64,000 nucleotides of DNA, from positions 17,236,001 through 17,300,000 of the forward strand of contig NC_135768.1 of NCBI RefSeq assembly GCF_052425735.1, given 5' to 3'. The position numbers were made by a program, and so were the translations under genes. Position 1 is the first letter of the stretch. Each line of letters starts with the position of its first letter. This DNA comes from Oculina patagonica. Taxonomy: Eukaryota. Of the stretch, positions 31,139 through 48,198 are shown in pieces. The notes under the pieces were generated by a model. It saw nothing but the letters and a program-made list of their open reading frames with translations, was not told the DNA's origin and did no database searches.

Positions 31139-31862
31139 TGTTACGGAGAATTTCCCGTATTTAAGTCATTTCTATGTTAAACCGTATTTAGCACGTTATT
31201 CATTTAAAAACACATAAAAGCCAACAGTACCTAATTAGCCAAAAATAACCTGTTGATCTATTATTTTGGTCGTTTAATATAAAAAGGCGTGAGTTAAAAT
31301 AATTGATTGTTCCTTTTTAGTTCCGAAGTTTTTGTGTTATTTATTTTTAGTAATAGCGGTTGTTTTGGTTATTACCGTAGCTAATTACTTAAGAGTTCCG
31401 CGCTTGTCGCATTTCTAAAAAGTGTTACATTTTCTCAGTATTTAATTTAGTTTTCTGATTACTTTACTAAATGAGTCTCGTGCCGATCTCGCCTCTGCTA
31501 TTCACTTGAATAGGAGTAATTAACAACCTGTTGGTCGCTGACTCATCGTGTTTTAACTGTGAATGCATTTGCTGACACATCTAGTTTCTTTAATTAATGT
31601 TTGGTTACTTAATTTACTAGAGGTGAGATCGGTCGGCAAGAAACCGCTCGTTAACACTTTCTAGCTATTCACTAGTTTTAATTTCGTTCGGTAGTTTTAA
31701 TTTAGTGTTATTTTAGTTGTAACTTCCTCCGCCAAGCAACGAACACTTTTGACAATAAACTCGGAAAGTTAAGTTAGAATTTTTATTAGGTTGCGCTATT
31801 CTCAAAGGACTTTATATTACTTTTCACATCTTGGTGTTAGCGCATTTATTATACTCTGTTAA

Positions 31863-32075
31863 ACACACATATACAGGAGTGGTTTTGGCACAAATCGAGA
31901 CAACTCGCTCGGCTCGCCCGGGCTCGCCTCGCTCCTTGTCTCGATTAGTGACCAAAACCACTCCTGTATATGTGTGTACAAAAATAGCGAGCGGCAAACA
32001 AAAATCTCTGCGGCTTGAGCGCTCAAAAATATCAAGCTGAATTGCTGTGCCAGAATTAATTCCTATTGAACAAAT
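31863..32075 (+). repeat. Left terminal inverted repeat (213 bp), starting with a 115-nt hairpin (31863-31977)
   Basis: Reverse complement of 47927-48139; arm ACACACATATACAGGAGTGGTTTTGG-CACAAATCGAGACAA pairs with TTGTCTCGATTAGTG-A-CCAAAACCACTCCTGTATATGTGTGT. Confidence 0.95.
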
Positions 32076-32100
32076 ATTTTTTCTTAGTATATAAGACAAG

Positions 32101-35100
32101 ATGTCTGCTGCAAGTTATTCGCAAGAAGTTTTGCAACAACTCTTGAAGGAAATTCGTGAATTTGAAAGAAAAACTCAAAGAAACGAAACTTTTTTACTGG
32201 CCCAATCCGATTTTAACGAATGGCTACGCGTGTGGAAAATGACCATACCAGAGGGTGGCCGTGCCAGCAAAGACCTTTTTGTATTTCAAAAGAAAACAAA
32301 AGGAAAGTTTATTGATTTGGTAGAGAATGAAATAAGAGATTTGAAAAGCGTAAAAGTAAGTTTTGAGATGAAAATAAAATTTACAAAAGAAAATTTTGAG
32401 ACTGGTTTAACACAAGAGATGGAGCATTATTTTAAAGAAAAAGAACCGCACGTTTTTAACGAACATAATAAACAACAGATAAAACAAGAGTTCGATAGAT
32501 TTATTGAAACAGCAAAGGGCCAAATTGAGGCTTGGTCAGAGCGGGGCTCAGGGTGGGTTCTTGAAAGAATAATGGCAGCGTACTTGAATGTTGCACGCTA
32601 TCAGCCATTGAAAGGAGGAACTTACTTACCCCTCCCAGCCAATTTGGCAAACAAGAAAGCAATCATTAACGTGCGAAACAGGGATAACGAATGTTTGAAG
32701 TGGGCTCTAAGAGCTGCTTTATTCCCACCAAGAGACGGAAAAAACTTGCAAAGAACAAGCAAATATCCGGTTAACGACGGAATTAACTATGAAGGAATTG
32801 TCTTTCCAACGCCTGTAAAACAGATTGACAAGCTTGAGGCACAAAACATAAACCTCGCAATAAATGTGTTCGGCTGGGAAGACAATCGTGTGATTGTGCA
32901 CAGAATAAGCAAAAAAGAAAAAACAATTCCTCGTATAAACTTTATTTTAATTGAGTCTGAAGAAATTCAGCACTATTGTTATGTAAAAAGAGTAAGCGCT
33001 TTACTTTTTGATCAGAGCAAAAGGTGTTGTAAAAAACACTTTTGCATGATGTGCTTGACCGGTTTTTCAAGAGCGGACTTGCTCGAGAACCACGAAAAAT
33101 ATTGCAATGGCATGAACGGCAGGCCGACAAGGATCGAGATGCCGGAAGATGGGGAAAACACCCTTTTTTTCCAAAATCATAACAAACAGATGAGGGCGCC
33201 ATACGTGATATATGCCGACTTTGAGGCATTGATAAGAAAGATTGAAGGCCGCGAGCGTGGCCCAGAAAGCAAACAAAAAAGCTACACAGAAAAGACAGAA
33301 AAGCATGAGGCATGTGGTTTTGCTTACACAGTTGTAAGGAGTGATGGCAGAAACAAACGACCAGTGGTTTACAGAGGTGAAAATGCTGTTGAAGTGTTTT
33401 TGAACTGTCTTCAAGAGGAAGAGAAAACAATAAGAAATAGTTTGTCATTGCCAAAACCTCTTGTGATGACTTCAGAAGATTGGGTAAAATTTAAAAATGC
33501 AACTGATTGCCATATTTGTGAAAAAAGTTTGATAAAAGATTACTTTTTAGACTCACTGCCAGTTTGGGAAATCGAACAAGAATATGCAGAACCTGAATAT
33601 TGCGGCCAATCTCATAAAAAATGTTTCTACACAGAAAAGAAAAAACATTTTTATTGTGAATACGAACAAAAATATTACAATTTTTTCTTAAAAAGGTTAA
33701 CAGAAGAAGAAGACAAAGAAGATGCACAAAAACAGGAAAACTGCTTCTTTTGTGGCAAACCTTTACTTCAGAAAAACTTCAGAGATGTTGTAAAGGATCA
33801 TTGCCACATCACAGGCAAGTACCGCGGAGCCGCGCACAACGCATGCAACCTGAAAATGCGAATAAAACCAAAAACGGACCAAATACCAGTTGTATTTCAC
33901 AACCTGAGGGGCTATGATGCACACCATTTAATGCAAGCGATGTCGAAGCTGTCGCAAGCGACACAGAAAGAGGTGAAATGCGTCGCCAACAACATGGAGA
34001 AATACATTACATTTTCATTTGGTGGTCTGCGTTTTATTGACAGCTTAAACTTTCTACAAGGAAGCCTCGATTCACTTGTAAGCGCAACACCGAAGGAGTC
34101 ATTGAAAATAACAAAAGTCATATCAAAAATAAACAGTGAAAAAAATGCAGAATTTGGGAAAAAATCAGAAAATCATAAAAAAGCAGAAATAGAAAAAAAT
34201 GCAGAACTTCTTTACAAAAAGGGGGTTTATCCATACGAGTACATGGACTCATGGGAAAGATTTGAAGAAACAAGTTTGCCAGACAAAAAAAAGTTTTACA
34301 GTAAGCTAAACGATGAACACATTACTGACGAAGAATACGAGCATGCAAAAAGTGTGTGGAAAACTTTTGGATGCGAAACTCTTGGAGATTACCACGATTT
34401 GTACGTTAAAACTGACGTAACTCTTTTGGCTGATGTTTTTGAGAACTTTCGAAACATATGCCAAGAAAAGTATGGCCTCGATCCAGCTCACTATTTTACA
34501 TCGCCTGGCCTTTCTTGGGACGCACTCTTGAAAAAGACAGGCGTGCAGCTTGAGCTCCTTACAGACTCAGAAATACATCTCTTTGTCGAAAGGGGAATAA
34601 GAGGAGGTATTTCCATGGTAAGCAAGAGATATGCCAAGGCAAACAATCATTATGTTGAAGGCTACGATCCAAGCAAGCCAAAAAAATACATAATGTACCT
34701 CGATGCAAACAACCTTTATGGGTGGGCAATGAGCAAGCCACTGCCAAAAAGTGCTTTTAGATGGAAAAGAGTTATGCCGAATGAAAAAGAAATAATGAGA
34801 AAAAAAGAGTTTGCAAAAACCGGCTGGATATTGGAGGTAGACCTCGAATACCCTGCAGAACTGCATGAAGAGCACAACAGTTACCCTTTAGCTCCTGAGA
34901 AAAAGAAAATAGATAAAGACTTATTTTCTCCTTACCAAAAAAAATTAATAAATGACCTTGATATGGATCCACCTGACAGTGAAAAGCTCGTGTTGACTCT
35001 TGAGGACAAAAGTAATTACGTTGTACATTATCGAAACTTGCAGTTTTATCTGAAACAGGGAATGAAACTAAAACATGTACACAGGGTGTTAGAGTTCGAA

Positions 35101-36171
35101 CAGGAATGTTGGATGGAGCCGTACATCCGGATGAACACAGAATTCAGGAAAAAAGCGAAAAACGACTTTGAAAAGAACTTTTACAAGCTCATGAATAACT
35201 CAGTTTTCGGAAAAACAATGGAAAACCTGCGTAACCGTGTTGACATAAAAATAGTGCGAAGCAATGAAACAAACAAAATAAGAAAAATGGTTGCCAGCCC
35301 ATTGTACTCAAGGCATGTAATGTTTTCAAACGACCTGGTCGGGATTGACATGCGCAAAAGCAAACTGTTTCTTAATAAGCCTGTCTATACAGGGATGACT
35401 ATCCTTGACAACAGCAAGATACTCATGTACGATTTTTATTACAACCATCTGAAAAAGGTATACGGACAACGATGCGAGCTATTGTATACAGACACAGACA
35501 GCCTTTTGCTCGAGATCGAAACAGAAGATATTTACACAGACATCGAATGTAACAAAACTCTGTATGATACAAGCGACTACCGAAAAGAGCATCCACTCCA
35601 TTCATACGAAAACAAAAAGGTCTTGGGGAAAATGAAAGACGAATGCGCAGGAAACCCAATAAAAGAGTGTGTTTGTCTTAGACCGAAAATGTACTCGATA
35701 ATGACTGATGTAGAAAGTGAAAAGGTTTTGAACAAAATAAACAACAAATTTCCCGAAACATACATATCAGAGTGTGATTGTACGGGACAAAAAATATACT
35801 CGATAATGACTGATGTAAAAAGTGAAAAAAAGTTTTTGGACAAAATAAACGACAAATTTACCGAAACCTTTATATCAGATTGCTTTTGTACGGGACAGAA
35901 AAAGTCAACGATAAAGGTGGACGAAAAAAAAATAAAAAAAGCGAAGGGTGTAAAAAAGTGTGTTGTCAAGAAGCAAATAATGCATGAACAGTATAAGGAA
36001 GCGCTTAAAGGACCAAAGCAGCTGTGGCATGGAATGAACATACTTAGAAGCGAGGGTCATGAGATTTACGGAATGCATCTCAACAAGGTCTCGCTGTCGC
36101 CTTTTGACTCAAAGCGATGGATAGCGGATGATGGGATACATACAAATGCTTACGGATATAAGCCGACATAA
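32101..36171 (+). CDS. polB: Protein-primed family B DNA polymerase with putative N-terminal terminal-protein and OTU-like domains and an endonuclease VII-like insert
   Basis: Exo I YADFE, Exo II FHNLRGYD, Exo III YVKTDV; Pol motifs YLDANNLYG, KLMNNSVFGK, YTDTDS; KDHCHITGKYRGAAHNACN (EndoVII-like); DNEC...HYCY (OTU-like). Confidence 0.96.
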   Translation: MSAASYSQEVLQQLLKEIREFERKTQRNETFLLAQSDFNEWLRVWKMTIPEGGRASKDLFVFQKKTKGKFIDLVENEIRDLKSVKVSFEMKIKFTKENFETGLTQEMEHYFKEKEPHVFNEHNKQQIKQEFDRFIETAKGQIEAWSERGSGWVLERIMAAYLNVARYQPLKGGTYLPLPANLANKKAIINVRNRDNECLKWALRAALFPPRDGKNLQRTSKYPVNDGINYEGIVFPTPVKQIDKLEAQNINLAINVFGWEDNRVIVHRISKKEKTIPRINFILIESEEIQHYCYVKRVSALLFDQSKRCCKKHFCMMCLTGFSRADLLENHEKYCNGMNGRPTRIEMPEDGENTLFFQNHNKQMRAPYVIYADFEALIRKIEGRERGPESKQKSYTEKTEKHEACGFAYTVVRSDGRNKRPVVYRGENAVEVFLNCLQEEEKTIRNSLSLPKPLVMTSEDWVKFKNATDCHICEKSLIKDYFLDSLPVWEIEQEYAEPEYCGQSHKKCFYTEKKKHFYCEYEQKYYNFFLKRLTEEEDKEDAQKQENCFFCGKPLLQKNFRDVVKDHCHITGKYRGAAHNACNLKMRIKPKTDQIPVVFHNLRGYDAHHLMQAMSKLSQATQKEVKCVANNMEKYITFSFGGLRFIDSLNFLQGSLDSLVSATPKESLKITKVISKINSEKNAEFGKKSENHKKAEIEKNAELLYKKGVYPYEYMDSWERFEETSLPDKKKFYSKLNDEHITDEEYEHAKSVWKTFGCETLGDYHDLYVKTDVTLLADVFENFRNICQEKYGLDPAHYFTSPGLSWDALLKKTGVQLELLTDSEIHLFVERGIRGGISMVSKRYAKANNHYVEGYDPSKPKKYIMYLDANNLYGWAMSKPLPKSAFRWKRVMPNEKEIMRKKEFAKTGWILEVDLEYPAELHEEHNSYPLAPEKKKIDKDLFSPYQKKLINDLDMDPPDSEKLVLTLEDKSNYVVHYRNLQFYLKQGMKLKHVHRVLEFEQECWMEPYIRMNTEFRKKAKNDFEKNFYKLMNNSVFGKTMENLRNRVDIKIVRSNETNKIRKMVASPLYSRHVMFSNDLVGIDMRKSKLFLNKPVYTGMTILDNSKILMYDFYYNHLKKVYGQRCELLYTDTDSLLLEIETEDIYTDIECNKTLYDTSDYRKEHPLHSYENKKVLGKMKDECAGNPIKECVCLRPKMYSIMTDVESEKVLNKINNKFPETYISECDCTGQKIYSIMTDVKSEKKFLDKINDKFTETFISDCFCTGQKKSTIKVDEKKIKKAKGVKKCVVKKQIMHEQYKEALKGPKQLWHGMNILRSEGHEIYGMHLNKVSLSPFDSKRWIADDGIHTNAYGYKPT

Positions 36172-36180
36172 ACAGAACGT

Positions 36181-37173
36181 TTATAGCTTTTCTGGTGGTA
36201 ACTGTGTATTTGGAGGAATAACAAGCAATTCTTCACGCACGAAGCCGCGCTTGGGACCATCGTGCAAGTAATAAAGCACTGGCTGATCAGGTTTAGTAAC
36301 AGACCTTTCAATGCTGTAGACTTTTAATGACCAAATCGGATCTGTTGCCCTTTTTACACCACCTTCCAGCTCACCAGGTTGGTAGAGATAGCGCACATTA
36401 ATGAGAGAGGGGAGTTTTTTTTCTTTCTTGCCAACAGGTCTTGTATATTTTGAGGACGGTTTTGACGAAACAGCCTTTTCTTTGATTGCGGCAGCTGGTT
36501 TCTTACAAGTAAGACTGGTTACTTCGTTGTTCAGAGCGGCAACAACTTCGGGTAGCCTTTTTACCCACGCTGTCGACCGCTGGCCAGATGGCAGGGTCAA
36601 CTCGACACCGTACTGATAACCAAACAGGCGCTCTGCCAGTGTTTGATTAAAACGTTCAACAATGGCTTGATCTCTGTGGATGTTAACACGCCCGCGCCTA
36701 ATATAGGTTTTGTGATTTTCCATTTCTTTGGTAACAGCGCCCATGAATTCGCGCCCGGGGTCAACTTGCAGCATCTGTGGCCATTTTAGTGCACTTCGCC
36801 TGTAAATTGTCTGAAAACCTTTTGCAACCTCAGTTGAATCTTTGGAGGTCAAAGGCTCGGCCTCTTTGTAACGGCTGGCAACGTCAACAACAGTCAGCGC
36901 GTATTTGTAAACTTTTCGCCCTCGCGGCAGTTTGTCGTGTGGCAGAAAAAGAAGGTCCGCCTGGTGGACCGCGTTAGGAGTAGAAACATCGAATTTTGGG
37001 CGAGGAACGTATCGGGGTGCCGGAAGGTAGATCTGCCAAAGGGCCTGCTTAACGAGCCACTTTTTAGCAGCATCTTCGGAAACCTTGGCAGCCTCGGCTA
37101 ATTTTTTTATCGCGGCAATTCCTTTCCAATAGCCCTGGGGGCTATAGTAGACTTTCGAGATCTTTGCATCCAT
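36181..37173 (-). CDS. Retroviral-type (rve) DDE integrase, 330 aa
   Basis: HQADLLFL (D), LTVVDVASRY, QVDPGREF (D), AIVERFNQTL (E); first ATG (MDAKISKVYY) at 37173. Confidence 0.93.
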   Translation of the reverse strand: MDAKISKVYYSPQGYWKGIAAIKKLAEAAKVSEDAAKKWLVKQALWQIYLPAPRYVPRPKFDVSTPNAVHQADLLFLPHDKLPRGRKVYKYALTVVDVASRYKEAEPLTSKDSTEVAKGFQTIYRRSALKWPQMLQVDPGREFMGAVTKEMENHKTYIRRGRVNIHRDQAIVERFNQTLAERLFGYQYGVELTLPSGQRSTAWVKRLPEVVAALNNEVTSLTCKKPAAAIKEKAVSSKPSSKYTRPVGKKEKKLPSLINVRYLYQPGELEGGVKRATDPIWSLKVYSIERSVTKPDQPVLYYLHDGPKRGFVREELLVIPPNTQLPPEKL

Positions 37174-37198
37174 GCGTATACAAGAAAAAAAGAAAAGT

Positions 37199-37624
37199 TT
37201 AAAGAAACCGAAAGGCAGCGTACCCAAGTGCAAGCGCGCCAGCGCCAACGAACATAAGTTCACCTTGTTTCTGCTGCTCGCTTGGCTGATAAAAATCAGA
37301 AAACTTTGGCTCTTTTGGAGGAATCATTTGCTTGTCAGGATGTGCCTGGTTGTAGAGTTTGAAAGCGTAGTCAGTGTTAGTGAAGTTCTGTTTGGCCTGC
37401 TCTTTTATTTCCGCGTTGGTTTGTATCCAGTCGAGGAGCTTGGTGCGGTCGCGAGAGTATTTCGCGTAAGCTGCCTGGTAAGCCTCGAGAGCTTTGTCGT
37501 GTCTTTCTTTTTCTTTCAAAGCAGCATCATCACCACCACCCAAAGCGCGAGCAAGGTAGTTGCCACCAATGAAAGCAGCGGCGTTTAAGATCGCTCCGCC
37601 AGCCATAATAGCGATGCTTGCCAT
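37199..37624 (-). CDS. Viral hypothetical protein, 141 aa, with hydrophobic N- and C-termini
   Basis: ATG-initiated, tightly packed; TAATATAAGAAC upstream; Gly/Ala-rich hydrophobic N-terminal helix and C-terminal FVGAGALALGYAAFRFL. Confidence 0.8.
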   Translation of the reverse strand: MASIAIMAGGAILNAAAFIGGNYLARALGGGDDAALKEKERHDKALEAYQAAYAKYSRDRTKLLDWIQTNAEIKEQAKQNFTNTDYAFKLYNQAHPDKQMIPPKEPKFSDFYQPSEQQKQGELMFVGAGALALGYAAFRFL

Positions 37625-37659
37625 TGTGTGTCTTTGTTCTTATATTATGCGAATTTTTT

Positions 37660-37878
37660 TTAATTGGTTGGGAGGATTTTTTGGTCCTCGAGATATTGTT
37701 TTAGTGCAAGACTGCCTGTCATGACGGCTGTGAACTTTACATAGTTCATAAAACTGCTGCTTGGGTCGGATGTAAAGTTTTCTTTCACAACTTTTTTGGC
37801 AGCCCAGCCGATTCCGGCGGCTAGACCTGTAATGGTGGCTGCATCCATGAGTGTTTTCACGAGTTTGTTGTCGGACAT
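37660..37878 (-). CDS. Small viral amphipathic/membrane protein, 72 aa
   Basis: Two short hydrophobic helices (ATITGLAAGIGWAA; FTAVMTGSLAL); co-oriented in the packed block. Confidence 0.75.
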   Translation of the reverse strand: MSDNKLVKTLMDAATITGLAAGIGWAAKKVVKENFTSDPSSSFMNYVKFTAVMTGSLALKQYLEDQKILPTN

Positions 37879-37932
37879 GACGGTAGAACTTAGTTCAGTA
37901 TAAAATTAAAAAAAAAACATTTAATTGAAAAT

Positions 37933-38109
37933 TCATTGTTCCCCTTCTTCTTGAGCGCTTTCGCGCACTTTCACGAAAATATCTGGGTTTTTTGCAATCC
38001 AAACGATTGTTTTGACGCACTTTTCCGTGAAATTTATCCAAACCAAGCCAACCGTTGAAACTGCAGCAACGGTTAACATAAACTGTTGGATGTCAGGGAC
38101 TTTCCACAT
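37933..38109 (-). CDS. Small single-pass membrane protein, 58 aa (MWKVPDIQQF...)
   Basis: TAATAAAATG start context; hydrophobic FMLTVAAVSTVGLVWINF; fills the gap between neighbours. Confidence 0.6.
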   Translation of the reverse strand: MWKVPDIQQFMLTVAAVSTVGLVWINFTEKCVKTIVWIAKNPDIFVKVRESAQEEGEQ

Positions 38110-38150
38110 TTTATTATAAAATGATGAAAAAATATTTAATTGAAAGTTTA

Positions 38151-38672
38151 TTAATCCATCGGACGAATTCCTCTTTTTGGTTGCGGAATTTTCGATGATG
38201 CGCTGATTCGCTGCCGCTCTGCAGGAGCCTCTTGAGCTGGCTCGGGTTCTGGTGCCGTGCCTTTGGCTGGGTGGGTTTTGCTCTTGATAAAGGCTTTGAT
38301 GTCTTCGCGTTTGACATAAGTTGTAATAATTGCAACGCCAATGCCCAGCAAAGAGATCCATTGATTTGTGCTTAGACCGCTGGATTCCGGCGGAGACTCG
38401 GTCGGAGCTGGTTCCGTTACGGGTGGAGTTACATTTCGCTTAGCAGCCGCAGATTTCTTTTCCTTTTCTTTTGCAATTATGGCAGCGGCCTCGACAGCAG
38501 CTTTTTTCTGTGCTTCACGAGCCTGTTTTGTTTTTTCAGCTGCAAGCTTGCCAGCAGCCACTCGCTTTGGATTTTTGGCAGGTTTTGTTGCAGGAGTTGT
38601 TGAAGTGACTTGTGGAACGTTTTCTTGAACAACTGCAGGTTCGCTCGGTATTTGTGTTTCAGGGTCCGCCAT
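38151..38672 (-). CDS. Pro/Ala/Lys-rich viral protein with KNPKRVAAGK motif and one TM helix, 173 aa
   Basis: TAATAAATG start; low-complexity basic region; WISLLGIGVAIITTYV hydrophobic segment. Confidence 0.8.
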   Translation of the reverse strand: MADPETQIPSEPAVVQENVPQVTSTTPATKPAKNPKRVAAGKLAAEKTKQAREAQKKAAVEAAAIIAKEKEKKSAAAKRNVTPPVTEPAPTESPPESSGLSTNQWISLLGIGVAIITTYVKREDIKAFIKSKTHPAKGTAPEPEPAQEAPAERQRISASSKIPQPKRGIRPMD

Positions 38673-38786
38673 TTATTAGAAAAAATAATATATTTAAATG
38701 AAAAATGCTTAGCAAACTTTTTTGGTCAGCATTTAATGAGCATTGTTCAGTAATTACTTAGCATTTTCTTAGCATTGCTTAGTAAT

Positions 38787-39346
38787 TTACTCAGGAAGAT
38801 CTTTATGCTCGCTTTCTAGAGTCGCTTGTGGTGCTGTGCTGTAATCAATGTGCTTTGCCGTTATCAAAGCAACAGAAGCTGGAGAAGAAACTTGCCGTAT
38901 TTGAAAGACAAACCGCCGACAAGATTGGAAAGCTCGTTGTTGATGATGTAGTCATTTTTAAGCTCTTTTTGCAAAGCTTCAATATTTTTTAAGGGCACGA
39001 ACAGACTTGCGGCTTTCGTAAAAAGAGTGAGCGCGCTGTCGATAAGATTTTCTGTGGTCTTGGCCCCAACATACGCTTCGTACCTCGTGAAGTACTTTTC
39101 GACGTCTTTGTCGGTCAAGCGCTTTACCTGATCGTGAGTTAGCTGCACACCGATTGCTTCTTTAGACTTGCCTGTTGAAACAAGTCTTGCAAGCTGTTCA
39201 CGTAAAGCTGGAATGTCAGGTCCCGCTGCTTGCATCTCTGACGGCATACTGCCTGGTTCAGGTTCAAGCAATTCCATTACGGACGTTTCTAACATAATTC
39301 GTTCACTTGCAGTGATATCGGTGGAAGTTGCGAACGGGTCAGCCAT
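38787..39346 (-). CDS. Viral hypothetical protein (160 aa as read; probably ~186 aa with a frameshift near 38885)
   Basis: TAATAAATG start; an alternate frame continues PASVALITAKHIDYSTAPQATLESEHKDLPE* to 38787. Confidence 0.7.
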
Positions 39347-39367
39347 TTATTACTCTAAAAAATATGT

Positions 39368-39967
39368 TCAATAAAAAAATTCTGTGCCGTAAGGGTGGCG
39401 ATGAGAAATAACAAGATGCGAAAACTTATTTTTTTTCAGCTTTGAAATGACTTCTTTGTAATCTTCATGGGAAAGTTCGCCAGCGTAATCCTCAAAGATT
39501 GCCTTCGTGGTCTTGGCAGAGGGGGTGTAAAAGAAAACGATTGCCGCAACATTTTCGCGGAATGAGGCTGTAATGCTTGTCATTTTTTGAGTCAGCACCC
39601 ACACGCTCAAGCCTGCATGGCGAGCAGAGAAAGCAAGATTCACCAACTCCCCCGTTCGCCCTTTCACATCTTTAGAAGCAGCGCAGTCGTCGAGGATGAT
39701 AAGCGTGTTCGCACCCTCAAAAAGAAATCTTGAAAGCTTTAACCAAGATTCAACCTCGTGCTGCTCGCAAATGAAAACAAAAAATCGAAGATCTTCCTCA
39801 GCAAAGCGATAATAAGTCTTGTTGTGCGCGAAAGTCGGGCATATGAGCACGATGTAGTCAAACTTGCCTCGGAAAGGGCCACAAAGCTGATTGACCACGT
39901 ACCTTGTTTTTCCTGAGTTTGTTGGTCCCACAATGAGGGCGTTGAAGGGTATATTGGCAGGATCCAT
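39368..39967 (-). CDS. A32/FtsK-HerA-type genome packaging ATPase
   Basis: Walker A GPTNSGKT, Walker B IILDD, then ARH and VLTQ motifs typical of this family. Confidence 0.93.
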   Translation of the reverse strand: MDPANIPFNALIVGPTNSGKTRYVVNQLCGPFRGKFDYIVLICPTFAHNKTYYRFAEEDLRFFVFICEQHEVESWLKLSRFLFEGANTLIILDDCAASKDVKGRTGELVNLAFSARHAGLSVWVLTQKMTSITASFRENVAAIVFFYTPSAKTTKAIFEDYAGELSHEDYKEVISKLKKNKFSHLVISHRHPYGTEFFY

Positions 39968-39998
39968 TTCAGAACAGAACTTCGTTTGCGTTCTTATA

Positions 39999-41252
39999 TT
40001 ATAAAAGCACAGATTCTAACTGCCTGCCAATTATATTCATTTGGGCGTCGCTGATTACGTAAATGTGGCAGTTCAAATTACCTGAGCCGCTTGTTTTCCT
40101 CTCTAGCTCAAGCTGGACACCGTCCTTTGTGTTCACAAGGCGCTTGCCGCTTCCGTGCATCGAGTGGTCAGCCATGGAACGCAGATCAATCAGAAGGCCG
40201 AACTTGTCTTCTGTGTAAAACTTTTGCAGGGTCATGTGCTGCGTTTTATTTTTTTCTTTCATGTAGAATCTTTTAACTTCTTCCCATATGTCCATTCCTT
40301 CGATGCCGTTGTTGTACAGCATGTTTGGCGAGCCGTTGACAGTGACGCTTACTTTTGTAAGGTCTGGGTTAATGTACTTTTCCGAGATCCTTGCACCTTT
40401 GGCATATTGCTCTATAAAAAGTAGCAAGATACCTTTTAGGGACCTCCTCTGAGGGTTGACCTTAAGATTCAGACGTGTGTCGGATCCTTTTGCAAAAGTA
40501 ACAACTTCGGCACGCTGGATGTGGTCGTAAGCGAACTCTTTGCCGCCCGAGTAAGCGCTGAACGCCTCATCTGCAATTTCCTTGCTTCTTATCATTTCGT
40601 ACTCCAGCTGTATGTTTGTCAGCTTGTATTTCAGTTTTGTTGCATCTGAGCCTCTGACAACATGTTCGGCTGCCGCGAGCTTCAGTTCGAAAACAAGATC
40701 GTTGTATAGTGCCTGTGGATAAAATGCTCCGTGGTCAGTTAGAATCTGGTGATCCAGACGGATGCGGTATTTATTTCCATATAGCTCATTCAGCTTTTTT
40801 TCTGCTTCGACTCCTGAAGTTTTCTTATCGCCAGCATTTGAGCGAATTTTGTTGAGGTCCTCGCTCTGAATGCCCTCTGGCACCCTGTCGTCGCGCTCCT
40901 CCTGCGAAAGGGAAAAATCTTCGAATATTTTGTAGATGTCATAGCCAACCGTGTCCTGCATGACGGTGCCTTCGTACTTTACAACAAACTTGTCGACCAG
41001 AGCTCGGCTGACGTTGTCAACCAGAAAGTTGTTGGCATGGCCTCCGCTCAAGTCGATGTTGAAGCGCAGCGCCAGCGAGCCAGGCACAATGACCTCGTTT
41101 TCGTTCAGCTTTGGCACCGAAACATACAGAGTTTCCTCTGGATTGGCTTCAGTGCGGTCAAAAGTGATTCGTTTTACAGCGCGCTCGGCTTTCAGTGCGC
41201 CAAGTATTTTCTCTGTGCGTCCCGGTCGAAGGTTTTCTTGAACAGCAGCCAT
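39999..41252 (-). CDS. Putative double jelly-roll major capsid protein, 417 aa
   Basis: Size, alternating hydrophobic beta-strand pattern (LYVSVP, LALRFNI, LVFELKL, IQLEYE, ILLLF, LLIDL, CHIYVISD) and position next to the ATPase. Fold assignment is inference. Confidence 0.75.
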   Translation of the reverse strand: MAAVQENLRPGRTEKILGALKAERAVKRITFDRTEANPEETLYVSVPKLNENEVIVPGSLALRFNIDLSGGHANNFLVDNVSRALVDKFVVKYEGTVMQDTVGYDIYKIFEDFSLSQEERDDRVPEGIQSEDLNKIRSNAGDKKTSGVEAEKKLNELYGNKYRIRLDHQILTDHGAFYPQALYNDLVFELKLAAAEHVVRGSDATKLKYKLTNIQLEYEMIRSKEIADEAFSAYSGGKEFAYDHIQRAEVVTFAKGSDTRLNLKVNPQRRSLKGILLLFIEQYAKGARISEKYINPDLTKVSVTVNGSPNMLYNNGIEGMDIWEEVKRFYMKEKNKTQHMTLQKFYTEDKFGLLIDLRSMADHSMHGSGKRLVNTKDGVQLELERKTSGSGNLNCHIYVISDAQMNIIGRQLESVLL

Positions 41253-41317
41253 CACTCGAAAGGTTTTATTGTTAAATTGAAAAGTTTAAATTGAAAATAT
41301 ATATATATAATTACGCG

Positions 41318-42681
41318 ATGGCAACAGGTGGTGGTGATTTTGGCTACGAGGACCCTGATTTAGACCGAGATCTTGACCATGACGGTGATAATGACGGTTA
41401 TGATGATGATGATGAACAAGAGGTCAACACAACCGGGCGATTTCAGCCAAATATGGCATCAACATTCTACCATGATGGTGAAGAACATGAAATGCAAACA
41501 ATGCAGCACGAACAGAGCGGGCTGCCTGATACCTCCTACGACGAAACACCTTTGCTTGGCAGTGCGAAATCAATGAGCGAAAAGGCATGGAATGCTCTAA
41601 AAGGGGTATTTCCAGAAAGCTCATCAACAAACCTTGAAGCCTCTTACAGTCATAAAGGGCAGGATTACAAGTAAAAATGGTCGGAGCTGGTAAAAAATCA
41701 TATGACCTTTTCACCACCAAAAGGGGTACAGGTGGTGAACAACAGCTAAATCCAAGTCTTACAAAAGAAATAAAAAATGCACTCGGAAAGTCCATTTTTG
41801 TATTAAAGGAAGAAGTTCAACAACAACTGGCCGAAAAAGAAAAAGCACTGGAACAATCTGTTTCTCTAGCACAAGAACAGGAAAAAGTTAAAAATGACAT
41901 GGAAGAAATCAGAAACCAAATAAGACAAATTGATGAACAGAGAACCGCTCTTGAGGATAAACATGGTAATTTGGATAAAGAAGAAATTCAAAAACTAAAA
42001 CAGCAAAAGAAAGACCTTGAAAAACAACATCAAGAAAAAAGAAAGAAACTGGAACAAATAAGCAAAACAGCAAAACAGACGCCAAAATTAAAAGAAGATA
42101 TTCAGAAGCTCACAGATGAAAATAACAGATTAAATGAAACCGTGAGAGAACTTGAAGAAAAAATGAACACAGAAGCCCTCAACGAACTAAAAGAACAAAA
42201 AACAGAACTGGAGCGCCAAAATGCGGAAGACAGAAAGATTATAGATGATGAGAATGCCTCCACCACTGACAAACAAGCCGCGGAAGAAAGAGTTGCTGAA
42301 AGAACCGAGGAGCTCGCACGTTTGCAAACACAGATTGCAGAAAGAGAAAGAGCGCTTCCACTTCGTGAGAGGATCAAAGAAATCTTCAAAAAAAATGGCG
42401 TGACAGTAACAGCAATCTTTCTTGCTGCTGGTGTCACGATTGGTGCTGTAATTGGTGCCATTACAAACTCTTTGAAGGCTACCGGCAAAGCGTTGGGGAA
42501 AGGCTTAAGTGATGTTGGCTCAAAGGTGGCATCAGCTCTGCCCGGTCTTATTGGCTCGATTGTGAGCTTTCTTTTCAAAACCGCTGGTCAAGTAATTAGC
42601 TTTCTTGCAGAGCACACCTGGCTGCTTATACTTGCTGCGGTTGCTTTTCTTGTTGAAAGATACATCAAGAAGAGACGTTAA
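41318..42681 (+). CDS. Acidic N-terminus, long coiled coil and C-terminal amphipathic/TM protein; read as two ORFs (41318-41674, 41677-42681), probably one frameshifted gene
   Basis: ORFs abut with a 2-nt gap; the ORF2 frame is open upstream (LQVK-M); heptad-rich E/K/Q segment followed by hydrophobic helices. Confidence 0.7.
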
Positions 42682-44393
42682 CGCATAAGGGCGTAGAGCA
42701 AAGCTGCAGCTCCAACCGCACCAACAGCGATAGTTGCTTTGTTTATTTCGTGTGTATCATTGACTTCAACCTTTGTAGCTTTAGCGCTTTGCGCGCTTTC
42801 AGCTTCAGCACCTTCGGTGCTCGTTGGTGCCGTAGTTTTTTTTGTGTCCCTTTGTGACTCCTTGTGTATAGGATTTGAAGGGTGGCTGTTTGGTGGGTTT
42901 ACCTTTGATGGTCCTCCGGCCATCAGTTTAAGAGCTGCTTTTTTTGTTGATTTATTAACATCATTATTCAATCCTATTTTCATTCCTGCTACAGCCTGCT
43001 TCAGCTGATTGTTGTAGCCGACAACGCTTTCTGTGTTTATCACCATACTACCAGGCATCAGCCAGGCACCAGGGCAGACAGCAAGGTTAAGCCGAACCTT
43101 CGCTTCATCGATAGAAAGTTGGTATCTTTGAACTGACTTTGCCAGATCTGGTTGCCTTATAGCGTCTTCAACCAACACGAGGAACTCACTTTGAGCCTCC
43201 TTTGCGCGGCCGCCTGTGCCAAGTATGCTACTTCGAACGTTGACCTGCGAACCCAGAATACAGTAGACAAAAGCCTCTATCGACTGGTTTACTCTCGACA
43301 AACCTGCCTGAGTCAGCCCTTCTGCGGCGTTAGGACAAAACCAGTCTGCCTGTGCATATGCAGCGTCGTCTGGCTCGATATATTGAATTAAGTTACCCTT
43401 GCTTGCAGCTCCCCCTTCGTCCGAAAATTTATCGTAATCGGGGTATTTTGCTCCAGAATTTTTTGGTCCAATGTTAGTAAACCAGATATAAACATCACCA
43501 AGCCCATGATTGGCACCTCTTGTGAAACGAAAATCGCTTGACGGGTCGACACCGAACTCAGCGCATATTCTTTTATACGAAGCCACGTCGTACTTGTTGT
43601 CGAACTGGCTAAACGTTGGGTCGCCTGGCAAGGCGCTTACGCTCTGAATTCCACCCATCTGAAACAATATTCGCCTGATTGTGAAATAAACGTGAAAGAG
43701 GTAAAAATTACGCACAACAGGTGGCAAACTGAGAGCTGAGTGTTCTTCATCAAAAATTTCACGACTTATCCCACTGCCTGTTGTCGCGCACCAGACAGCA
43801 AAGTTAAGTTGTTGAGGCCAGTAGCCAATATTTGGGCTAGCAAGCCACCTTTTTGACTCTTTTCCTGATGTATGCTTCAGTTTTGTTTTTTGAAAAATCT
43901 CTCTTAATTTCGTTGTGAAATATTGATCTGGTGTGACGTAGATGTTGATTTTGCTGTTAAATATTTTTTTCAAACTCGGTGCGGCTTCGTGAAATCCAAC
44001 CGCGGGAATTGGTAAAGATGCGCCTTTTGCGCCGCTTGGTGACAGCTGTTGTGGAAAACCGCCTGAAATTTGATTCACCCCCAGTGCTTTTTTCATCTCT
44101 GGGCTCCAATATTTGCTGTCAGAGCCAAAAACATTTATCAAATGGCCTTGCTCTGCCTTGTAATAAATGTCTGCCGTTGCTGTGTGGTTGTACGCGAACT
44201 CAACCTGTGCAACAAATTTTGTTCGGTCAGCGTTTGGATATTTTGCAAGAAAAGGTTTCCATGCCTTGTCTTTTGCCGCTTCAGAAATTGTAGTTGCTTC
44301 TGGGGTTTTCATCCACTTCATAAAATCTCTTTCTTTGGAATCAAGAAAAATTGATTGAGAAATGTCATCAGCTCTCGGAATAGGCGGAGCCAT
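42678..44393 (-). CDS. Viral hypothetical protein, 571 aa, with C-terminal membrane anchor
   Basis: Long ORF with TATAAAATG start; Trp/Cys-containing core (WPQQLNFAVWCATTGSGIS); terminal IAVGAVGAAALLYALMR. Confidence 0.85.
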   Translation of the reverse strand: MAPPIPRADDISQSIFLDSKERDFMKWMKTPEATTISEAAKDKAWKPFLAKYPNADRTKFVAQVEFAYNHTATADIYYKAEQGHLINVFGSDSKYWSPEMKKALGVNQISGGFPQQLSPSGAKGASLPIPAVGFHEAAPSLKKIFNSKINIYVTPDQYFTTKLREIFQKTKLKHTSGKESKRWLASPNIGYWPQQLNFAVWCATTGSGISREIFDEEHSALSLPPVVRNFYLFHVYFTIRRILFQMGGIQSVSALPGDPTFSQFDNKYDVASYKRICAEFGVDPSSDFRFTRGANHGLGDVYIWFTNIGPKNSGAKYPDYDKFSDEGGAASKGNLIQYIEPDDAAYAQADWFCPNAAEGLTQAGLSRVNQSIEAFVYCILGSQVNVRSSILGTGGRAKEAQSEFLVLVEDAIRQPDLAKSVQRYQLSIDEAKVRLNLAVCPGAWLMPGSMVINTESVVGYNNQLKQAVAGMKIGLNNDVNKSTKKAALKLMAGGPSKVNPPNSHPSNPIHKESQRDTKKTTAPTSTEGAEAESAQSAKATKVEVNDTHEINKATIAVGAVGAAALLYALMR

Positions 44394-44433
44394 TTTATAT
44401 TAAAGATTTATTTTTCAAAAGATAATTATAAAG

Positions 44434-45129
44434 ATGGTTGTGCTCACTGTCACCACAACAGAAAATCCTCACACTGTTTATTTTGACCAGCCTATTCCAA
44501 AACCAAGCTATATCCGGCTTTTAAGTTGTTCTCTTTACAACAGCTGGAATAGTTTGGAAAAGGATGGAATAGTTTTTTATAAACAAGCGAACAAGGAAGA
44601 GAAGGCGCGTTATATACGGCAAGGAAACTACTCACTCGATGACATTGGAAGTATTTTTGAAAAAGGATTTCCAGAGAAAAACATGTTTTCTGTAACAAAA
44701 GGCATTACAGGTCGTTCTTTGATAATAAGAGCAAAAGAGCCCAATTTAAAAACTATTGGACTAAATGAAAGTCTTATTAAGTTCTTTAATTTGCCTGGGT
44801 TTGAGAATCACGCAAGCATTGAAAAAGAATATTTTGAAACATTTGAGATAAATAATGTTTCAAATCCTAAAAATTACTTTATCGACTGTGACCTTATCGA
44901 CAAGCAACAAAGCTTGCTAAATGGTAAGCCAACAAGCCTTTTAGCGTTTTTTGACATACGTGGAAAACCGTATGAAAAAGTTTGTTACCAAAATACACAT
45001 CTTAACGTCTTGCGCGACGTTTCTGCTGAAGAAAATGTATCATCTCTGACTCTTTCGATTAGAGATGAAAATGGAAACCCATTCGATTTTAACGGCACAA
45101 ATCTTACATATGAGCTGGAATTAAATTAA
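44434..45129 (+). CDS. Putative single jelly-roll minor capsid (penton) protein
   Basis: FDQPI..IRLLSCSLYNSW N-terminus, FIDCDLI..LLAFF, and C-terminal LTLSIRDENGNPFDFNG.NLTYELEL pattern typical of Polinton/PLV minor capsid proteins. Confidence 0.8.
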   Translation: MVVLTVTTTENPHTVYFDQPIPKPSYIRLLSCSLYNSWNSLEKDGIVFYKQANKEEKARYIRQGNYSLDDIGSIFEKGFPEKNMFSVTKGITGRSLIIRAKEPNLKTIGLNESLIKFFNLPGFENHASIEKEYFETFEINNVSNPKNYFIDCDLIDKQQSLLNGKPTSLLAFFDIRGKPYEKVCYQNTHLNVLRDVSAEENVSSLTLSIRDENGNPFDFNGTNLTYELELN

Positions 45130-45152
45130 ATTAAATACAAAAATAAAATTTT

Positions 45153-45854: not shown

Positions 45855-46171
45855 ACACTGGATTTCATCTGAGTGTGCAAAAAAATAAATATAACATTTG
45901 AGGCTGTGTTCTTTTTTTTCCACGATCCACGATCCACGATTCTGATTTTCCCAAAGTCCAAATCCCCCTCAGCCTGCCTGTCACGCTCTGACTGCGACAA
46001 AATATTTTAGCGGCCGCCAGCGAAAGACGGGTAACACGCATTTATTTAGGTGAGAGCGGGGGGTTATTTGACTTTTTTTTTTTTGCTTGGGAGCCGTTGT
46101 ATTTATTAATATATAAGCAATCAATAAACAAAACAGATGTGCAAAGTAAAAAATAATTTTATTCAGTTGCT

Positions 46172-48139: not shown

Positions 48140-48198
48140 GTTAACAATAGACGCTTGTACAAATCGTATATAAACAACCGCACTTGTAATGCTTTCTC

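What the first reader, a model, noticed from the sequence alone, without database searches (positions are those of the whole stretch)
31863..31977. Each TIR starts with a 115-nt fold-back hairpin whose loop is a (CTCG)n array, reminiscent of parvoviral ITRs
Seen: the terminal 41 nt are repeated in inverse at 31936-31977 (one mismatch, one bulge), enclosing CTCGCTCGGCTCGCCCGGGCTCGCCTCGCTCC. The mirror copy is at 48025-48139, so the terminal ACACACATATACAGG sequence occurs four times. Known: protein-primed replicons need only a short terminal repeat for slide-back, whereas AAV-type ITRs are hairpins with GCTC-repeat binding sites. Inference: the hairpin may allow self-priming or rolling-hairpin replication, cruciform resolution (the pPolB carries an EndoVII-like domain), or give a second internal integrase/origin site. 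It could bear on links between pPolB elements and ssDNA bidnaviruses/parvoviruses.
Basis: partly seen in the sequence, partly recalled or inferred. Interest (0 to 1): 0.85.

Follow-up and report, generated by a model that had tools for sequence, protein, structure and literature searches.

The report
Conserved terminal hairpins in coral Polintons
Each end of a 16-kb virus-like transposon (Polinton/Maverick) in a coral genome begins with a 115-base palindrome that can fold into a hairpin. Dozens of related elements keep the same structure in one fixed orientation, which points to a role in copying the element's ends and argues against parvovirus-style hairpin flipping.

Summary
The element at 31863-48139 has perfect 213-nt TIRs. 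The first 115 nt of each TIR is an imperfect palindrome (DNA fold -45.6 kcal/mol, z = -12). The element is a Polinton/Maverick of the coral Oculina patagonica, with a pPolB carrying an EndoVII-like domain, an rve integrase and an A32-type ATPase.

The hairpin is a clade feature. At least 24 distinct relatives (pPolB 50-90% identical) carry a 105-190-nt near-perfect palindrome at the element terminus, 19 of 32 usable upstream windows against 14 of 761 background windows. Stem sequences turn over with two-sided changes (26 of 86 and 7 of 47 pairs). Four features stay constant:
- a terminal short tandem repeat, usually (AC)3;
- a TT(C/T)TGG box at nt 21-26;
- a 1-3-nt bulge found only on the inner arm;
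- a pyrimidine-rich apex with GCTYG motifs.

Polarity is fixed. No whole-hairpin flip/flop was seen, only three apex-only inversions, and no Rep-type nickase was found. Parvovirus-like rolling-hairpin replication is therefore not supported.

The best reading is a cis-acting telomere/origin structure for protein-primed replication, in which single-stranded ends refold into a duplex origin. A 2026 preprint reports similar terminal palindromes in protist virophages and PLVs, so this is a new variant of a known kind.

The parts
31863..48139 (+). Complete Polinton/Maverick element, 16,277 bp
   Evidence: Bounded by perfect 213-nt TIRs. It carries pPolB, rve integrase and an A32-like ATPase. Its GC content is higher than the flanks. 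The closest proteins come from Oculina patagonica.
31858..31862 (.). Left target-site duplication GTTAA. It could be a 6-bp TGTTAA at 31857-31862 if the last T of the right TIR is counted as target.
   Evidence: Read directly. A TSD of 5-8 bp is accepted for Polintons (PMC10748475).
48140..48144 (.). Right target-site duplication GTTAA
31863..32075 (+). Left TIR (213 nt)
   Evidence: 100% complementary to 47927-48139.
47927..48139 (-). Right TIR (213 nt)
31863..31977 (+). Left terminal palindrome (hairpin), 115 nt, 40 bp
   Evidence: Homologous hairpins in L001 and L002 show compensatory changes.
48025..48139 (-). Right terminal palindrome. It is identical to the left one and has the same polarity relative to its terminus.
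31863..31868 (+). Terminal (AC)3 short tandem repeat. The mirror copy is at 48134-48139.
   Evidence: Most relatives keep ACACAC at the terminus, and others carry (TA)n or ACT repeats.
31883..31888 (+). Outer copy of the conserved box (TTTTGG here, TTCTGG in most relatives) at nt 21-26 from the terminus
   Evidence: The box is found in both arms in 18 of 24 hairpins, mostly at nt 21-26.
31952..31957 (+). Inner, inverted copy of the box (CCAAAA)
31951..31951 (+). Single-nucleotide bulge on the inner arm, next to the box. This is the conserved asymmetry.
   Evidence: A bulge of 1-3 nt lies on the inner arm only in 15 independent hairpins.
31904..31935 (+). 32-nt pyrimidine-rich apex with GCTCG/CTCG motifs and two GGCTCGCC copies
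   Evidence: Across 22 hairpins the apex holds GCTYG and CRAGC at 23:2.
31978..32049 (+). Spacer carrying the complementary motif (GCRAGC type)
   Evidence: In spacers GCTYG and CRAGC occur at 7:20, the opposite bias to the apex.
32050..32075 (+). Conserved block at the inner end of the TIR. A TATA-like sequence follows near 32087-32096, just upstream of the pPolB ATG.
   Evidence: Invariant columns in the alignment of window, L001, L002 and L003. It is recognisable in L004, L088 and L006. The promoter role is inferred.
32101..36171 (+). pPolB gene (1356 aa). It aligns over its full length with relatives.
   Evidence: Relatives carry PF03175 and PF02945.
33706..33855 (+). Endonuclease VII-like (His-Me/HNH) domain inside the pPolB, residues 536-585
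   Evidence: A DHCH...RG..H..CN motif is visible in the query lines.
36181..37263 (-). rve-type integrase
   Evidence: PF00665, E = 2e-6, 28.5 bits, below the 32.6 cut-off.
39368..39967 (-). A32-like packaging ATPase
   Evidence: PF04665, E = 1.5e-10.

Best explanation
The 115-nt fold-back is the conserved cis-acting telomere of a clade of cnidarian pPolB Polintons.

Shown:
- It is a terminal palindrome whose pairing starts at nucleotide 1 of the element.
- Base pairing is preserved while the sequence turns over.
- It has a fixed polarity relative to the end.
- It carries three conserved primary-sequence features: a terminal (AC)3-type repeat, a TT(C/T)TGG box at nt 21-26, and a GCTYG-rich apex. 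It also carries an inner-arm bulge.

Inferred mechanism:
- The element replicates by protein priming from its ends. The (AC)3 repeat would serve slide-back or jump-back of the primed product.
- The box at a fixed distance from the end would position the priming complex.
- When a strand is displaced or otherwise single-stranded, each end snaps back on itself. The 3' end is then again part of a blunt duplex identical to the genuine terminus.
- In effect this is an intramolecular mini-panhandle. Complementary-strand synthesis can be protein-primed there without the two ends, 16 kb apart, having to find each other.
- The folded ends are also protected, and the inner arm holds a back-up copy of the terminal sequence.
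- Because priming copies each strand faithfully from the end, the hairpin is never inverted. That fits the fixed polarity.
- The apex and bulge are probably recognition features in the folded state, as hairpin loops are in Streptomyces terminal-protein telomeres.
For: - Structure: -45.6 kcal/mol, z = -12. Pairing reaches the first nucleotide defined independently by TIR and TSD.
- Conservation of position: an ungapped inverted-repeat score of at least 23 occurs in 19 of 32 700-nt windows upstream of pPolB. The background is 14 of 761 windows.
- Four further contigs start inside the inner arm, where the assembler broke at the palindrome.
- Hairpins of 105-186 nt with 40-86 bp occur in at least 24 distinct elements with pPolB 50-90% identical.
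- Covariation, family of six: 94.5% Watson-Crick cells against 26-37% when the partner is slid. 26 of 86 pairs changed on both sides, against 2-6 when slid.
- Covariation, window family: 95.7% against 20-44%, and 7 of 47 pairs against 0-1.
- Pairing conserved along 40-86 bp is more than a protein site needs, so the folded state itself appears to matter.
- Fixed polarity: the bulge next to the box is on the inner arm in 15 independent hairpins and on the outer arm alone in none. Apex motifs favour the pyrimidine orientation in 24 of 29 copies.
- Both ends of the window element and the right end of L088 have the same polarity relative to the terminus.
- Terminal short tandem repeats and the box at nt 21-26 are seen.
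- Vertebrate Mavericks likewise have (AG)3 or (AGT)2 end motifs (PMC8097293).
- A 1-3-bp terminal repeat is the published argument for protein priming in Polintons (PMC4196379, summarising Kapitonov and Jurka 2006).
- Precedent: Streptomyces terminal-protein-capped replicons fold their 3' ends into palindromic hairpins. The telomere-associated protein binds the hairpin loops to place the protein primer (PMC4513846).
Against: - No direct evidence that the hairpin forms in vivo or that this clade uses a terminal protein. No terminal-protein domain was identified.
- Other protein-primed replicons, and other Polintons as described in the papers read, manage without terminal palindromes. The hairpin is therefore not a requirement of the mechanism.
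- Three apparently intact relatives (L009/L010 at about 51%, L030 at 61%) show no palindrome within 560-750 nt upstream of pPolB.
- A blunt 3' hairpin is also an excellent self-primer, so the same structure fits hairpin priming.
- Near-perfect arms could be kept alike by arm-to-arm copying rather than by selection for pairing.
- Counts of polarity are not phylogenetically independent.
- The Halocafeteria preprint finds such palindromes preferentially with non-pPolB replicases (10.64898/2026.07.28.741278).
Confidence: 0.45

Rival explanations
1. Hairpin-primed (rolling-hairpin-like) replication. The folded 3' end primes DNA synthesis itself. The resulting closed turnaround is opened by a nick, for which the EndoVII-like domain of the pPolB is the candidate, and is then copied back.
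For: - The blunt, fully paired 3' end is a natural primer.
- A nuclease domain sits in the polymerase.
- The same idea was put forward for terminal palindromes of protist virophages and PLVs (10.64898/2026.07.28.741278).
- Three apex inversions exist: L025a, L033 and L084.
Against: - Hairpin transfer inverts the whole palindrome. Here the bulge never changes arm (15:0).
- The apex inversions leave the bulge on the inner arm, so they are internal inversions between the arms, not flip/flop.
- No HUH/Rep nickase or RuvC-type resolvase was detected.
- The element encodes a protein-primed polymerase and has a terminal tandem repeat, which self-priming does not need.
- One-orientation ends are known from my own knowledge in some parvoviruses, so fixed polarality weakens this model without excluding it.
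Confidence: 0.12
2. Structure-guided release from the chromosome. In the integrated duplex the terminal palindrome extrudes as a cruciform whose base lies exactly at the host-element junction. The EndoVII-like domain cuts this four-way junction, exposing an end from which the pPolB can copy the retained hairpin strand. This would restore a complete end without inversion.
For: - The palindrome's outer boundary coincides with the element boundary.
- The Pfam family hit is that of a junction- and cruciform-cutting enzyme, and the domain is present in hairpin-bearing relatives L004 and L005.
- The model predicts fixed polarity, as observed.
- It would answer how an integrated Polinton obtains free ends.
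Against: - Purely inferential.
- A weak EndoVII signal is also found in L030, which has no palindrome within 640 nt, and in L013.
- Nuclease domains are fused to pPolBs of nematode, oomycete and mollusc Polintons, and to insect Mavericks, with no hairpins reported (PMC10748475, PMC5803895).
- A 32-nt unpaired centre and interior mismatches disfavour cruciform extrusion (own knowledge).
- No footprints such as solo hairpins at empty sites were found in the limited DNA available.
Confidence: 0.13
3. Integration signal. The palindrome supplies two inverted copies of the integrase end-binding site (terminal repeat plus box), or a folded end that the rve integrase prefers.
For: - The box at a fixed 21-26 nt from the end, in both arms.
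- The preprint notes an association of palindromes with particular rve integrases (10.64898/2026.07.28.741278).
Against: - Pairing is conserved over 40-86 bp, far beyond a binding site.
- The variable nt 7-20 and the deep stem show two-sided changes, which selection on a duplex protein site would not demand.
Confidence: 0.1
4. A by-product without function. The palindrome arose by fold-back synthesis or template switching at an end and persists because arm-to-arm copying keeps it perfect.
For: - Inverted duplications do arise at these ends, as in L025: a hairpin followed by a truncated second copy.
- Coral DNA contains many unrelated fold-back hairpins.
- The preprint mentions accidental annealing as an alternative (10.64898/2026.07.28.741278).
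Against: - The feature is retained in lineages down to 50% pPolB identity, with conserved length class, box position, bulge side and apex motif.
- A neutral palindrome would lose its asymmetry or decay.
- Enrichment is about 30-fold over background.
Confidence: 0.08
5. A regulatory or RNA element, such as a transcribed hairpin giving small RNAs, or a promoter or insulator element for the terminal genes.
For: - The TIR also contains a conserved promoter-proximal block and a TATA-like sequence for pPolB.
- There is a sub-threshold hit to a miRNA precursor model on both strands.
Against: - The Rfam hit scores 32 bits against a cut-off of 65, appears on both strands and belongs to a plant family. 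That is a generic long-hairpin effect.
- The hairpin lies upstream of the TATA-like sequence, at the extreme end, where no upstream promoter belongs to the element.
- The terminal repeat and the exact end-registration are unexplained by this model.
Confidence: 0.07

Closest known systems
Terminal palindromic repeats at the TIR extremities of endogenous virophages and polinton-like viruses of Halocafeteria seosinensis (bioRxiv 10.64898/2026.07.28.741278, July 2026)
   Same: - The palindrome lies inside the TIR, directly next to the TSD.
- The elements carry rve integrases and belong to the same virus supergroup.
- A replication role for a terminal hairpin is proposed.
   Different: - There the palindromes are about 52 nt in the example given and occur in a protist.
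- They are said to be preferentially associated with non-pPolB replication genes.
- Here they are 105-190 nt, occur in animal (coral) elements that all encode pPolB, and have a demonstrably fixed polarity, a conserved box, a bulge and an apex motif.
- The preprint gives no covariation or flip/flop analysis in the text I read.
Canonical Polinton/Maverick termini (Kapitonov and Jurka 2006, as summarised in PMC4196379; vertebrate Mavericks, PMC8097293; nematode Polintons, PMC10748475)
   Same: - 13-25 kb elements with TIRs of 46-1500 bp and TSDs of 5-8 bp.
- A short tandem repeat at the very end, (AG)3 or (AGT)2 in vertebrates and (AC)3 here.
- pPolB plus rve integrase.
   Different: - None of the papers I could read mentions a terminal palindrome or hairpin.
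- The published model uses a racket formed by pairing of the two TIRs, not a fold-back within each TIR.
- The founding paper itself is not held in the library.
Streptomyces terminal-protein-capped telomeres (PMC4513846)
   Same: - Protein-primed end synthesis on a 3' single strand that folds into stable palindromic hairpins.
- The hairpin loops are the binding sites of the telomere-associated protein.
- The end sequence pairs with an internal palindrome.
- Fold-back extension of the 3' end is observed as a side reaction.
   Different: - Bacterial replicons with an internal origin and end patching only.
- Several short, tightly packed palindromes rather than one long one.
- Unrelated proteins (Tpg/Tap).
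Adenovirus-type protein-primed origins with a panhandle intermediate (own knowledge)
   Same: - A terminal short repeat used for jump-back.
- A conserved box at a fixed distance from the end.
- The displaced strand regenerates a duplex origin by pairing of inverted repeats.
   Different: In adenovirus the pairing is between the two distant ITRs. Here each end could do it alone.
Parvovirus terminal hairpins and poxvirus hairpin telomeres
   Same: An imperfect terminal palindrome of similar size, with asymmetric unpaired bases.
   Different: - Those systems are self-primed.
- They need a site-specific nickase or a resolvase.
- They typically occur as flip and flop forms. Poxvirus telomeres are called 'flip-and-flop' in the title of Shenouda et al. 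2022, cited in PMC11296320.
- Here there is no such gene, no whole-hairpin inversion, and a protein-primed polymerase is encoded.
- Bidnavirus ITRs are stated not to form hairpins (PMC4061559).

Membership tests
Polinton/Maverick (element as a whole) | [quoted passage not shown] | tested here: met
   A 1356-aa ORF. Relatives carry PF03175 (L030 PF03175 E = 3.5e-17). The window protein itself gave only the PF02945 hit at E < 0.01.
Polinton/Maverick (element as a whole) | Retrovirus-like (rve) integrase | tested here: met
   PF00665 E = 2e-6, 28.5 bits, below the curated cut-off of 32.6. It occupies the same position as in relatives.
Polinton/Maverick (element as a whole) | TIRs, a TSD of about 6 bp (5-8) and a short terminal tandem repeat | tested here: met
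   213-nt perfect TIRs. TSD GTTAA, or TGTTAA. Terminal (AC)3.
Polinton/Maverick (element as a whole) | Virion module (A32-like ATPase, double jelly-roll capsid, penton, protease) | tested here: inconclusive
   The ATPase is met (PF04665, E = 1.5e-10). The other ORFs gave no Pfam hit, and no structure prediction was run. Gene order matches relatives.
Parvovirus-type rolling-hairpin terminus | Terminal palindrome that folds into a hairpin | tested here: met
Parvovirus-type rolling-hairpin terminus | Element-encoded HUH (Rep/NS1) nickase with repeated binding sites in the hairpin | tested here: not met
   No such Pfam family in 17 ORFs scanned. The GCTYG motifs have no identified binding protein.
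Parvovirus-type rolling-hairpin terminus | Flip and flop orientations of the asymmetric hairpin | tested here: not met
   Bulge side 15:0. Both ends of the window element and the right end of L088 have the same polarity. Only three apex-only inversions were seen.
Parvovirus-type rolling-hairpin terminus | Single-stranded packaged genome | not testable with these tools
   Only integrated or assembled DNA is available.
Poxvirus/ASFV-type covalently closed hairpin telomere | Covalently closed ends, concatemer junctions and a RuvC-like resolvase | tested here: inconclusive
   No resolvase of that family was detected. An EndoVII-like domain is present. Closure of free ends cannot be tested. No head-to-head junction was seen in the loci fetched.
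Streptomyces-type terminal-protein telomere | Terminal protein on the 5' end, and a 3' strand folding into palindromes whose loops bind a telomere protein | not testable with these tools
   Fold-back is met. The conserved apex motif and polarity are compatible. The proteins are unrelated. This is an analogy of mechanism only.
Terminal palindromes of endogenous virophages/PLVs (2026 preprint) | Palindrome within the TIR, adjacent to the TSD | tested here: met
Terminal palindromes of endogenous virophages/PLVs (2026 preprint) | Association with non-pPolB replication genes | tested here: not met
   All hairpin-bearing elements here were found through their pPolB.

The most novel reading that the evidence does not exclude
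The terminal palindrome and the EndoVII-like domain fused to the polymerase form one device. The palindrome extrudes as a cruciform whose base marks the host-element junction. The polymerase-borne junction nuclease cuts there. The same polymerase then copies the retained hairpin strand to regenerate a complete, non-inverted, protein-primable end. This would be a structure-guided way for an integrated Polinton to obtain free ends, and the first concrete answer to how these elements leave the chromosome.
Probability: 0.12. Interest if true: 0.85.

Novelty: new variant of a known kind. Interest (0 to 1): 0.58.

Why it matters
How Polintons/Mavericks replicate and move is still known only from models, because no animal system has been worked out.

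This work shows a conserved, co-varying terminal hairpin in a whole clade of pPolB-encoding animal Polintons. The hairpin has fixed polarity, a box at a fixed distance from the end, and a conserved apex motif.

Three consequences follow:
- The models gain a concrete cis-element.
- The simplest parvovirus-like scheme is ruled out for this clade.
- Very recent observations in protist virophages and PLVs are extended to animals and to pPolB replicons.

There is also a practical point. These palindromes break short-read assemblies at element ends: four contigs here start inside the inner arm. Polinton termini are therefore probably under-reported.

Tried and rejected
Searches and look-ups that gave nothing:
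- The search for related loci on viral contigs found no relatives.
- The look-up of encoding contigs returned no DNA for P0078, P0084 and P0123 because the files were too large. P0108 is not on record. More distant pPolB clades, and a 17.8-kb contig that might have held both ends, could not be examined.
- Sequence search of the EndoVII-like segment against solved structures gave no significant hit, best E = 0.24. The domain call rests on Pfam only.
- Kapitonov and Jurka 2006 (PMC1450207) is not held. Its statements are taken second-hand.

Readings considered and rejected:
- Rfam gave only a sub-threshold plant miRNA-precursor hit on both strands. I rejected it as a generic hairpin effect.
- The sigma-70/terminator scan is irrelevant for a eukaryotic element and showed nothing above shuffles.
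- Whole-hairpin flip/flop was looked for and not found.
- The three inverted apices first looked like flip/flop. They are apex-only inversions, because the bulge stays on the inner arm.
- I rejected the idea that the hairpin is a MITE inserted near the ends. It is part of both TIRs and is registered to nucleotide 1.
- The 1.39-kb palindrome beside L004 was tested as a possible head-to-head junction. It has no similarity to the element.

Left undecided:
- L006 and L007 contigs start in G-rich repeats close to the terminus, so they cannot show the end.
- L003 (79% pPolB identity) lacks the hairpin. Homology to the window TIR begins only at TIR position 189, so the copy is taken as truncated at that end.
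Full report
**1. What is at the coordinates**

The window holds a 16,277-bp element at 31863-48139, bounded by perfect 213-nt terminal inverted repeats at 31863-32075 and 47927-48139. It is flanked by the direct repeat GTTAA at 31858-31862 and 48140-48144. This could be read as TGTTAA if the last T of the right TIR is counted as target.

The first 115 nt of each TIR form an imperfect palindrome:
- 31863-31903 pairs with 31936-31977, giving 40 bp.
- The outer 26 bp are perfect.
- There is one A/A mismatch at 31892/31947 and one bulged A at 31951.
- The arms surround a 32-nt pyrimidine-rich apex at 31904-31935.

As single-stranded DNA it folds at -45.6 kcal/mol, against -12.6 +/- 2.7 for shuffles (z = -12.1, 0 of 200). 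The terminal 20-mer occurs four times in the window and nowhere else. Only '(CTCG)n array' is loose, because the apex has five CTCG and two GGCTCGCC copies but is not a regular array.

**2. What the element is**

The ORFs encode three recognisable proteins:
- a 1356-aa protein-primed-type polymerase with an Endonuclease VII-like domain (PF02945, E = 1.1e-6, residues 536-585);
- an rve integrase (PF00665, E = 2e-6, just below the curated cut-off);
- an A32-like packaging ATPase (PF04665, E = 1.5e-10).

The closest proteins are annotated from the coral Oculina patagonica. One is 100% identical over 770 aa, and paralogues are 73-90% identical. This is a Polinton/Maverick integrated in a coral chromosome. 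At the level checked, I saw no break in the pPolB, integrase, ATPase or the large capsid-region ORFs. The perfect TIRs suggest a recent insertion.

**3. Relatives**

I fetched these loci:
- three O. patagonica paralogues (L001-L003);
- ENA assembly loci (L004, L005, L088);
- two contigs binned as a bacterial MAG (L006, L007);
- 80 coral-metagenome contigs (L008-L087).

The closest paralogues carry the homologous hairpin. L001 (pPolB 90% identical) and L002 (85%) have an almost invariant inner stem and apex, and an outer stem changed on both sides. L003 lacks that end.

More distant elements have a hairpin at the same place with unrelated stem sequence. Examples are L004 (164 nt), L005 (137 nt), and L022, L025, L043 and L059 (about 185 nt, up to 86 bp).

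Among contigs reaching at least 600 nt upstream of pPolB, 19 of 32 have an ungapped inverted-repeat score of at least 23 in the 700 nt upstream. Elsewhere in the same DNA the figure is 14 of 761 windows. Four more contigs begin inside the inner arm, which is what a short-read assembler does at a palindrome.

Some relatives show no palindrome in the 560-750 nt available upstream. These are L009/L010 (about 51%) and L030 (61%). The feature may therefore be limited to a sub-clade, or in those elements it may lie further out.

**4. Covariation**

| Alignment | Watson-Crick cells | Same, partner slid 1-3 columns | Pairs changed on both sides | Same, slid |
|---|---|---|---|---|
| Six members of one family | 94.5% | 26-37% | 26 of 86 | 2-6 |
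| Window, L001, L002 | 95.7% | 20-44% | 7 of 47 | 0-1 |

Pairing along 40-86 bp is thus maintained while the sequence changes. That is more than any duplex protein site would require. It implies that the intrastrand fold, as a hairpin or a cruciform, is the state that matters. The alternative is that the arms are regularly copied from one another, which also requires the fold to form.

**5. What stays constant**

(a) The terminus is a short tandem repeat. It is ACACAC in most hairpins, and (TA)n or ACT repeats in two families.

(b) A TT(C/T)TGG box lies at nt 21-26 from the end, with its inverted copy in the inner arm. It is present in both arms in 18 of 24 hairpins, and nt 7-20 are variable.

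(c) Directly after the box, 15 independent hairpins have 1-3 extra nucleotides on the inner arm only. None has them on the outer arm alone. The remaining hairpins have a 1x1 mismatch there.

(d) The apex is pyrimidine-rich with GCTYG motifs on the strand read from the terminus inward. The count of GCTYG to CRAGC is 23:2 in the apex. The spacer between the hairpin and pPolB has the opposite bias, 7:20.

(e) The inner end of the TIR is a conserved block, followed by a TATA-like sequence just before the pPolB start.

**6. The flip/flop test**

The hairpin is asymmetric in both bulge and apex, so an inversion of the whole palindrome would be visible. None was found:
- Both ends of the window element are identical.
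- The right end of L088 has the same polarity relative to its terminus as the left end of its relative L004, with a compensated outer stem.
- The bulge side is 15:0.
- Apex motifs favour the same orientation in 24 of 29 copies, with 4 opposite and 1 tie.

Three copies have a clearly inverted apex. L084 is inverted relative to L065, L046 and one other family member. L025a is inverted relative to six family members. L033 is the third. In L025a and L084 the bulge is still on the inner arm, so these are inversions of the segment between the arms, as can happen at any inverted repeat. They are not hairpin transfer. These counts are not phylogenetically independent. However, the bulged bases and stems differ between lineages.

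**7. Genes that a rolling-hairpin scheme would need**

No HUH/Rep nickase or RuvC-type resolvase was detected in 17 ORFs. The only nuclease signal is the EndoVII-like His-Me domain inside the pPolB. It is also present in L004 and L005, and weakly in L030 and L013. Nuclease domains (HNH, VSR) fused to Polinton pPolBs are already described (PMC10748475). A weak EndoVII hit was noted in insect Maverick POLB (PMC5803895). The domain is therefore not specific to hairpin-bearing elements as far as I can see.

**8. Literature**

- Summaries of the founding paper give 6-bp TSDs, 100-1000-bp TIRs, a 1-3-bp terminal tandem repeat and a racket-shaped single-stranded intermediate formed by the two TIRs (PMC4196379). 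The paper itself is not held.
- Work on vertebrate Mavericks (PMC8097293), adintoviruses (PMC8502044) and nematode Polintons (PMC10748475) does not mention hairpins or palindromes.
- Bidnavirus ITRs are stated not to form hairpins (PMC4061559).
- One July 2026 preprint (10.64898/2026.07.28.741278) reports palindromes within the TIRs, next to the TSDs, in endogenous virophages and a PLV subtype of a protist. [quoted passage not shown]
- Streptomyces terminal-protein telomeres fold into palindromic hairpins whose loops bind the telomere-associated protein (PMC4513846).

**9. Interpretation**

Shown: a conserved, co-varying terminal palindrome of fixed polarity, with conserved sequence islands, in a clade of coral pPolB Polintons.

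Inferred (confidence about 0.45): it is the telomere/origin structure of protein-primed replication.
- The terminal repeat would serve slide-back.
- The box at a fixed distance would position the priming complex.
- On single-stranded DNA each end refolds into a blunt duplex identical to the true end.
- Complementary-strand synthesis can then start without long-range TIR pairing.
- Faithful end-to-end copying explains why the hairpin is never inverted.

The rivals are hairpin self-priming with a nick, cruciform cutting by the EndoVII-like domain at the host-element junction, an integrase signal, a functionless by-product, and a regulatory or RNA element. Each is listed with its evidence in the rival explanations. 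The cruciform model is the most novel reading not excluded.

**10. Verdict**

The parvovirus-like reading is not supported. The kind of feature has just been noticed in protist relatives. The present case is a new variant: animal host, pPolB-linked, long, polar, and with defined conserved sub-elements.

Noticed in passing
window 46172-46694: A 49-bp unit repeated 10.8 times (93% matches) lies inside the element's right part. That region has no long ORF between 45854 and the right TIR.
   Followed up: no
window 48195-48259: A 13-bp unit repeated 5 times lies in the host flank, about 55 bp outside the right end of the element.
   Followed up: no
window 6748-6908 and 57215-57487: Two unrelated fold-back inverted repeats lie elsewhere in the window. 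The first is a 161-nt near-perfect hairpin (-69.6 kcal/mol with flanks). Neither has the Polinton terminal motif, and both look like fold-back/MITE-type repeats.
   Followed up: partly
window 31978-32049 (and relatives' spacers): The spacer between hairpin and pPolB carries the complement (GCRAGC type) of the apex motif: 20 against 7 in spacers, compared with 2 against 23 in apices. The two could pair in single-stranded DNA, or they could be inverted sites for one protein.
   Followed up: partly
L025 1124-1423 (same in L083): A complete terminal hairpin with an inverted apex is followed directly by a second copy of the hairpin. The second copy is truncated on its outer arm and has the normal apex. 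It looks like a fold-back or template-switch rearrangement at an element end.
   Followed up: partly
L043, inside the pPolB match: The pPolB of this relative is interrupted once by an insertion. The insertion carries a terminal-type hairpin of a different family (CACTACTATA-type terminus, normal apex polarity). This suggests nested insertion of a related, possibly non-autonomous, element. Its boundaries were not determined.
   Followed up: no
L004 7758-9149: A 1.39-kb almost perfect palindrome with a 16-nt centre lies about 0.5 kb outside the element's left end. It has no similarity to the element. It is either a large fold-back repeat or a long-read assembly artefact.
   Followed up: partly
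L006 1-120; L007 1-30: Two contigs deposited under a Flavobacteriales MAG encode a Polinton-like gene set (pPolB 53% identical). They are evidently misbinned eukaryote-associated DNA. No rve integrase appears in the gene list of L006. The 16.4-kb contig starts in G-rich GAGTGAGCC-type repeats about 300 nt upstream of pPolB.
   Followed up: no
L005 1913-2047: An unrelated fold-back hairpin in the host flank has an apex (CTCGCTCCGCTCGG) much like the Polinton apex motif. The motif may therefore not be exclusive to these elements.
   Followed up: no
L008, L042, L073, L086 (contig starts): These short-read metagenome contigs begin inside the inner arm of the terminal hairpin. Assemblers evidently break at these palindromes, so Polinton ends are likely to be missed in such data.
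   Followed up: yes
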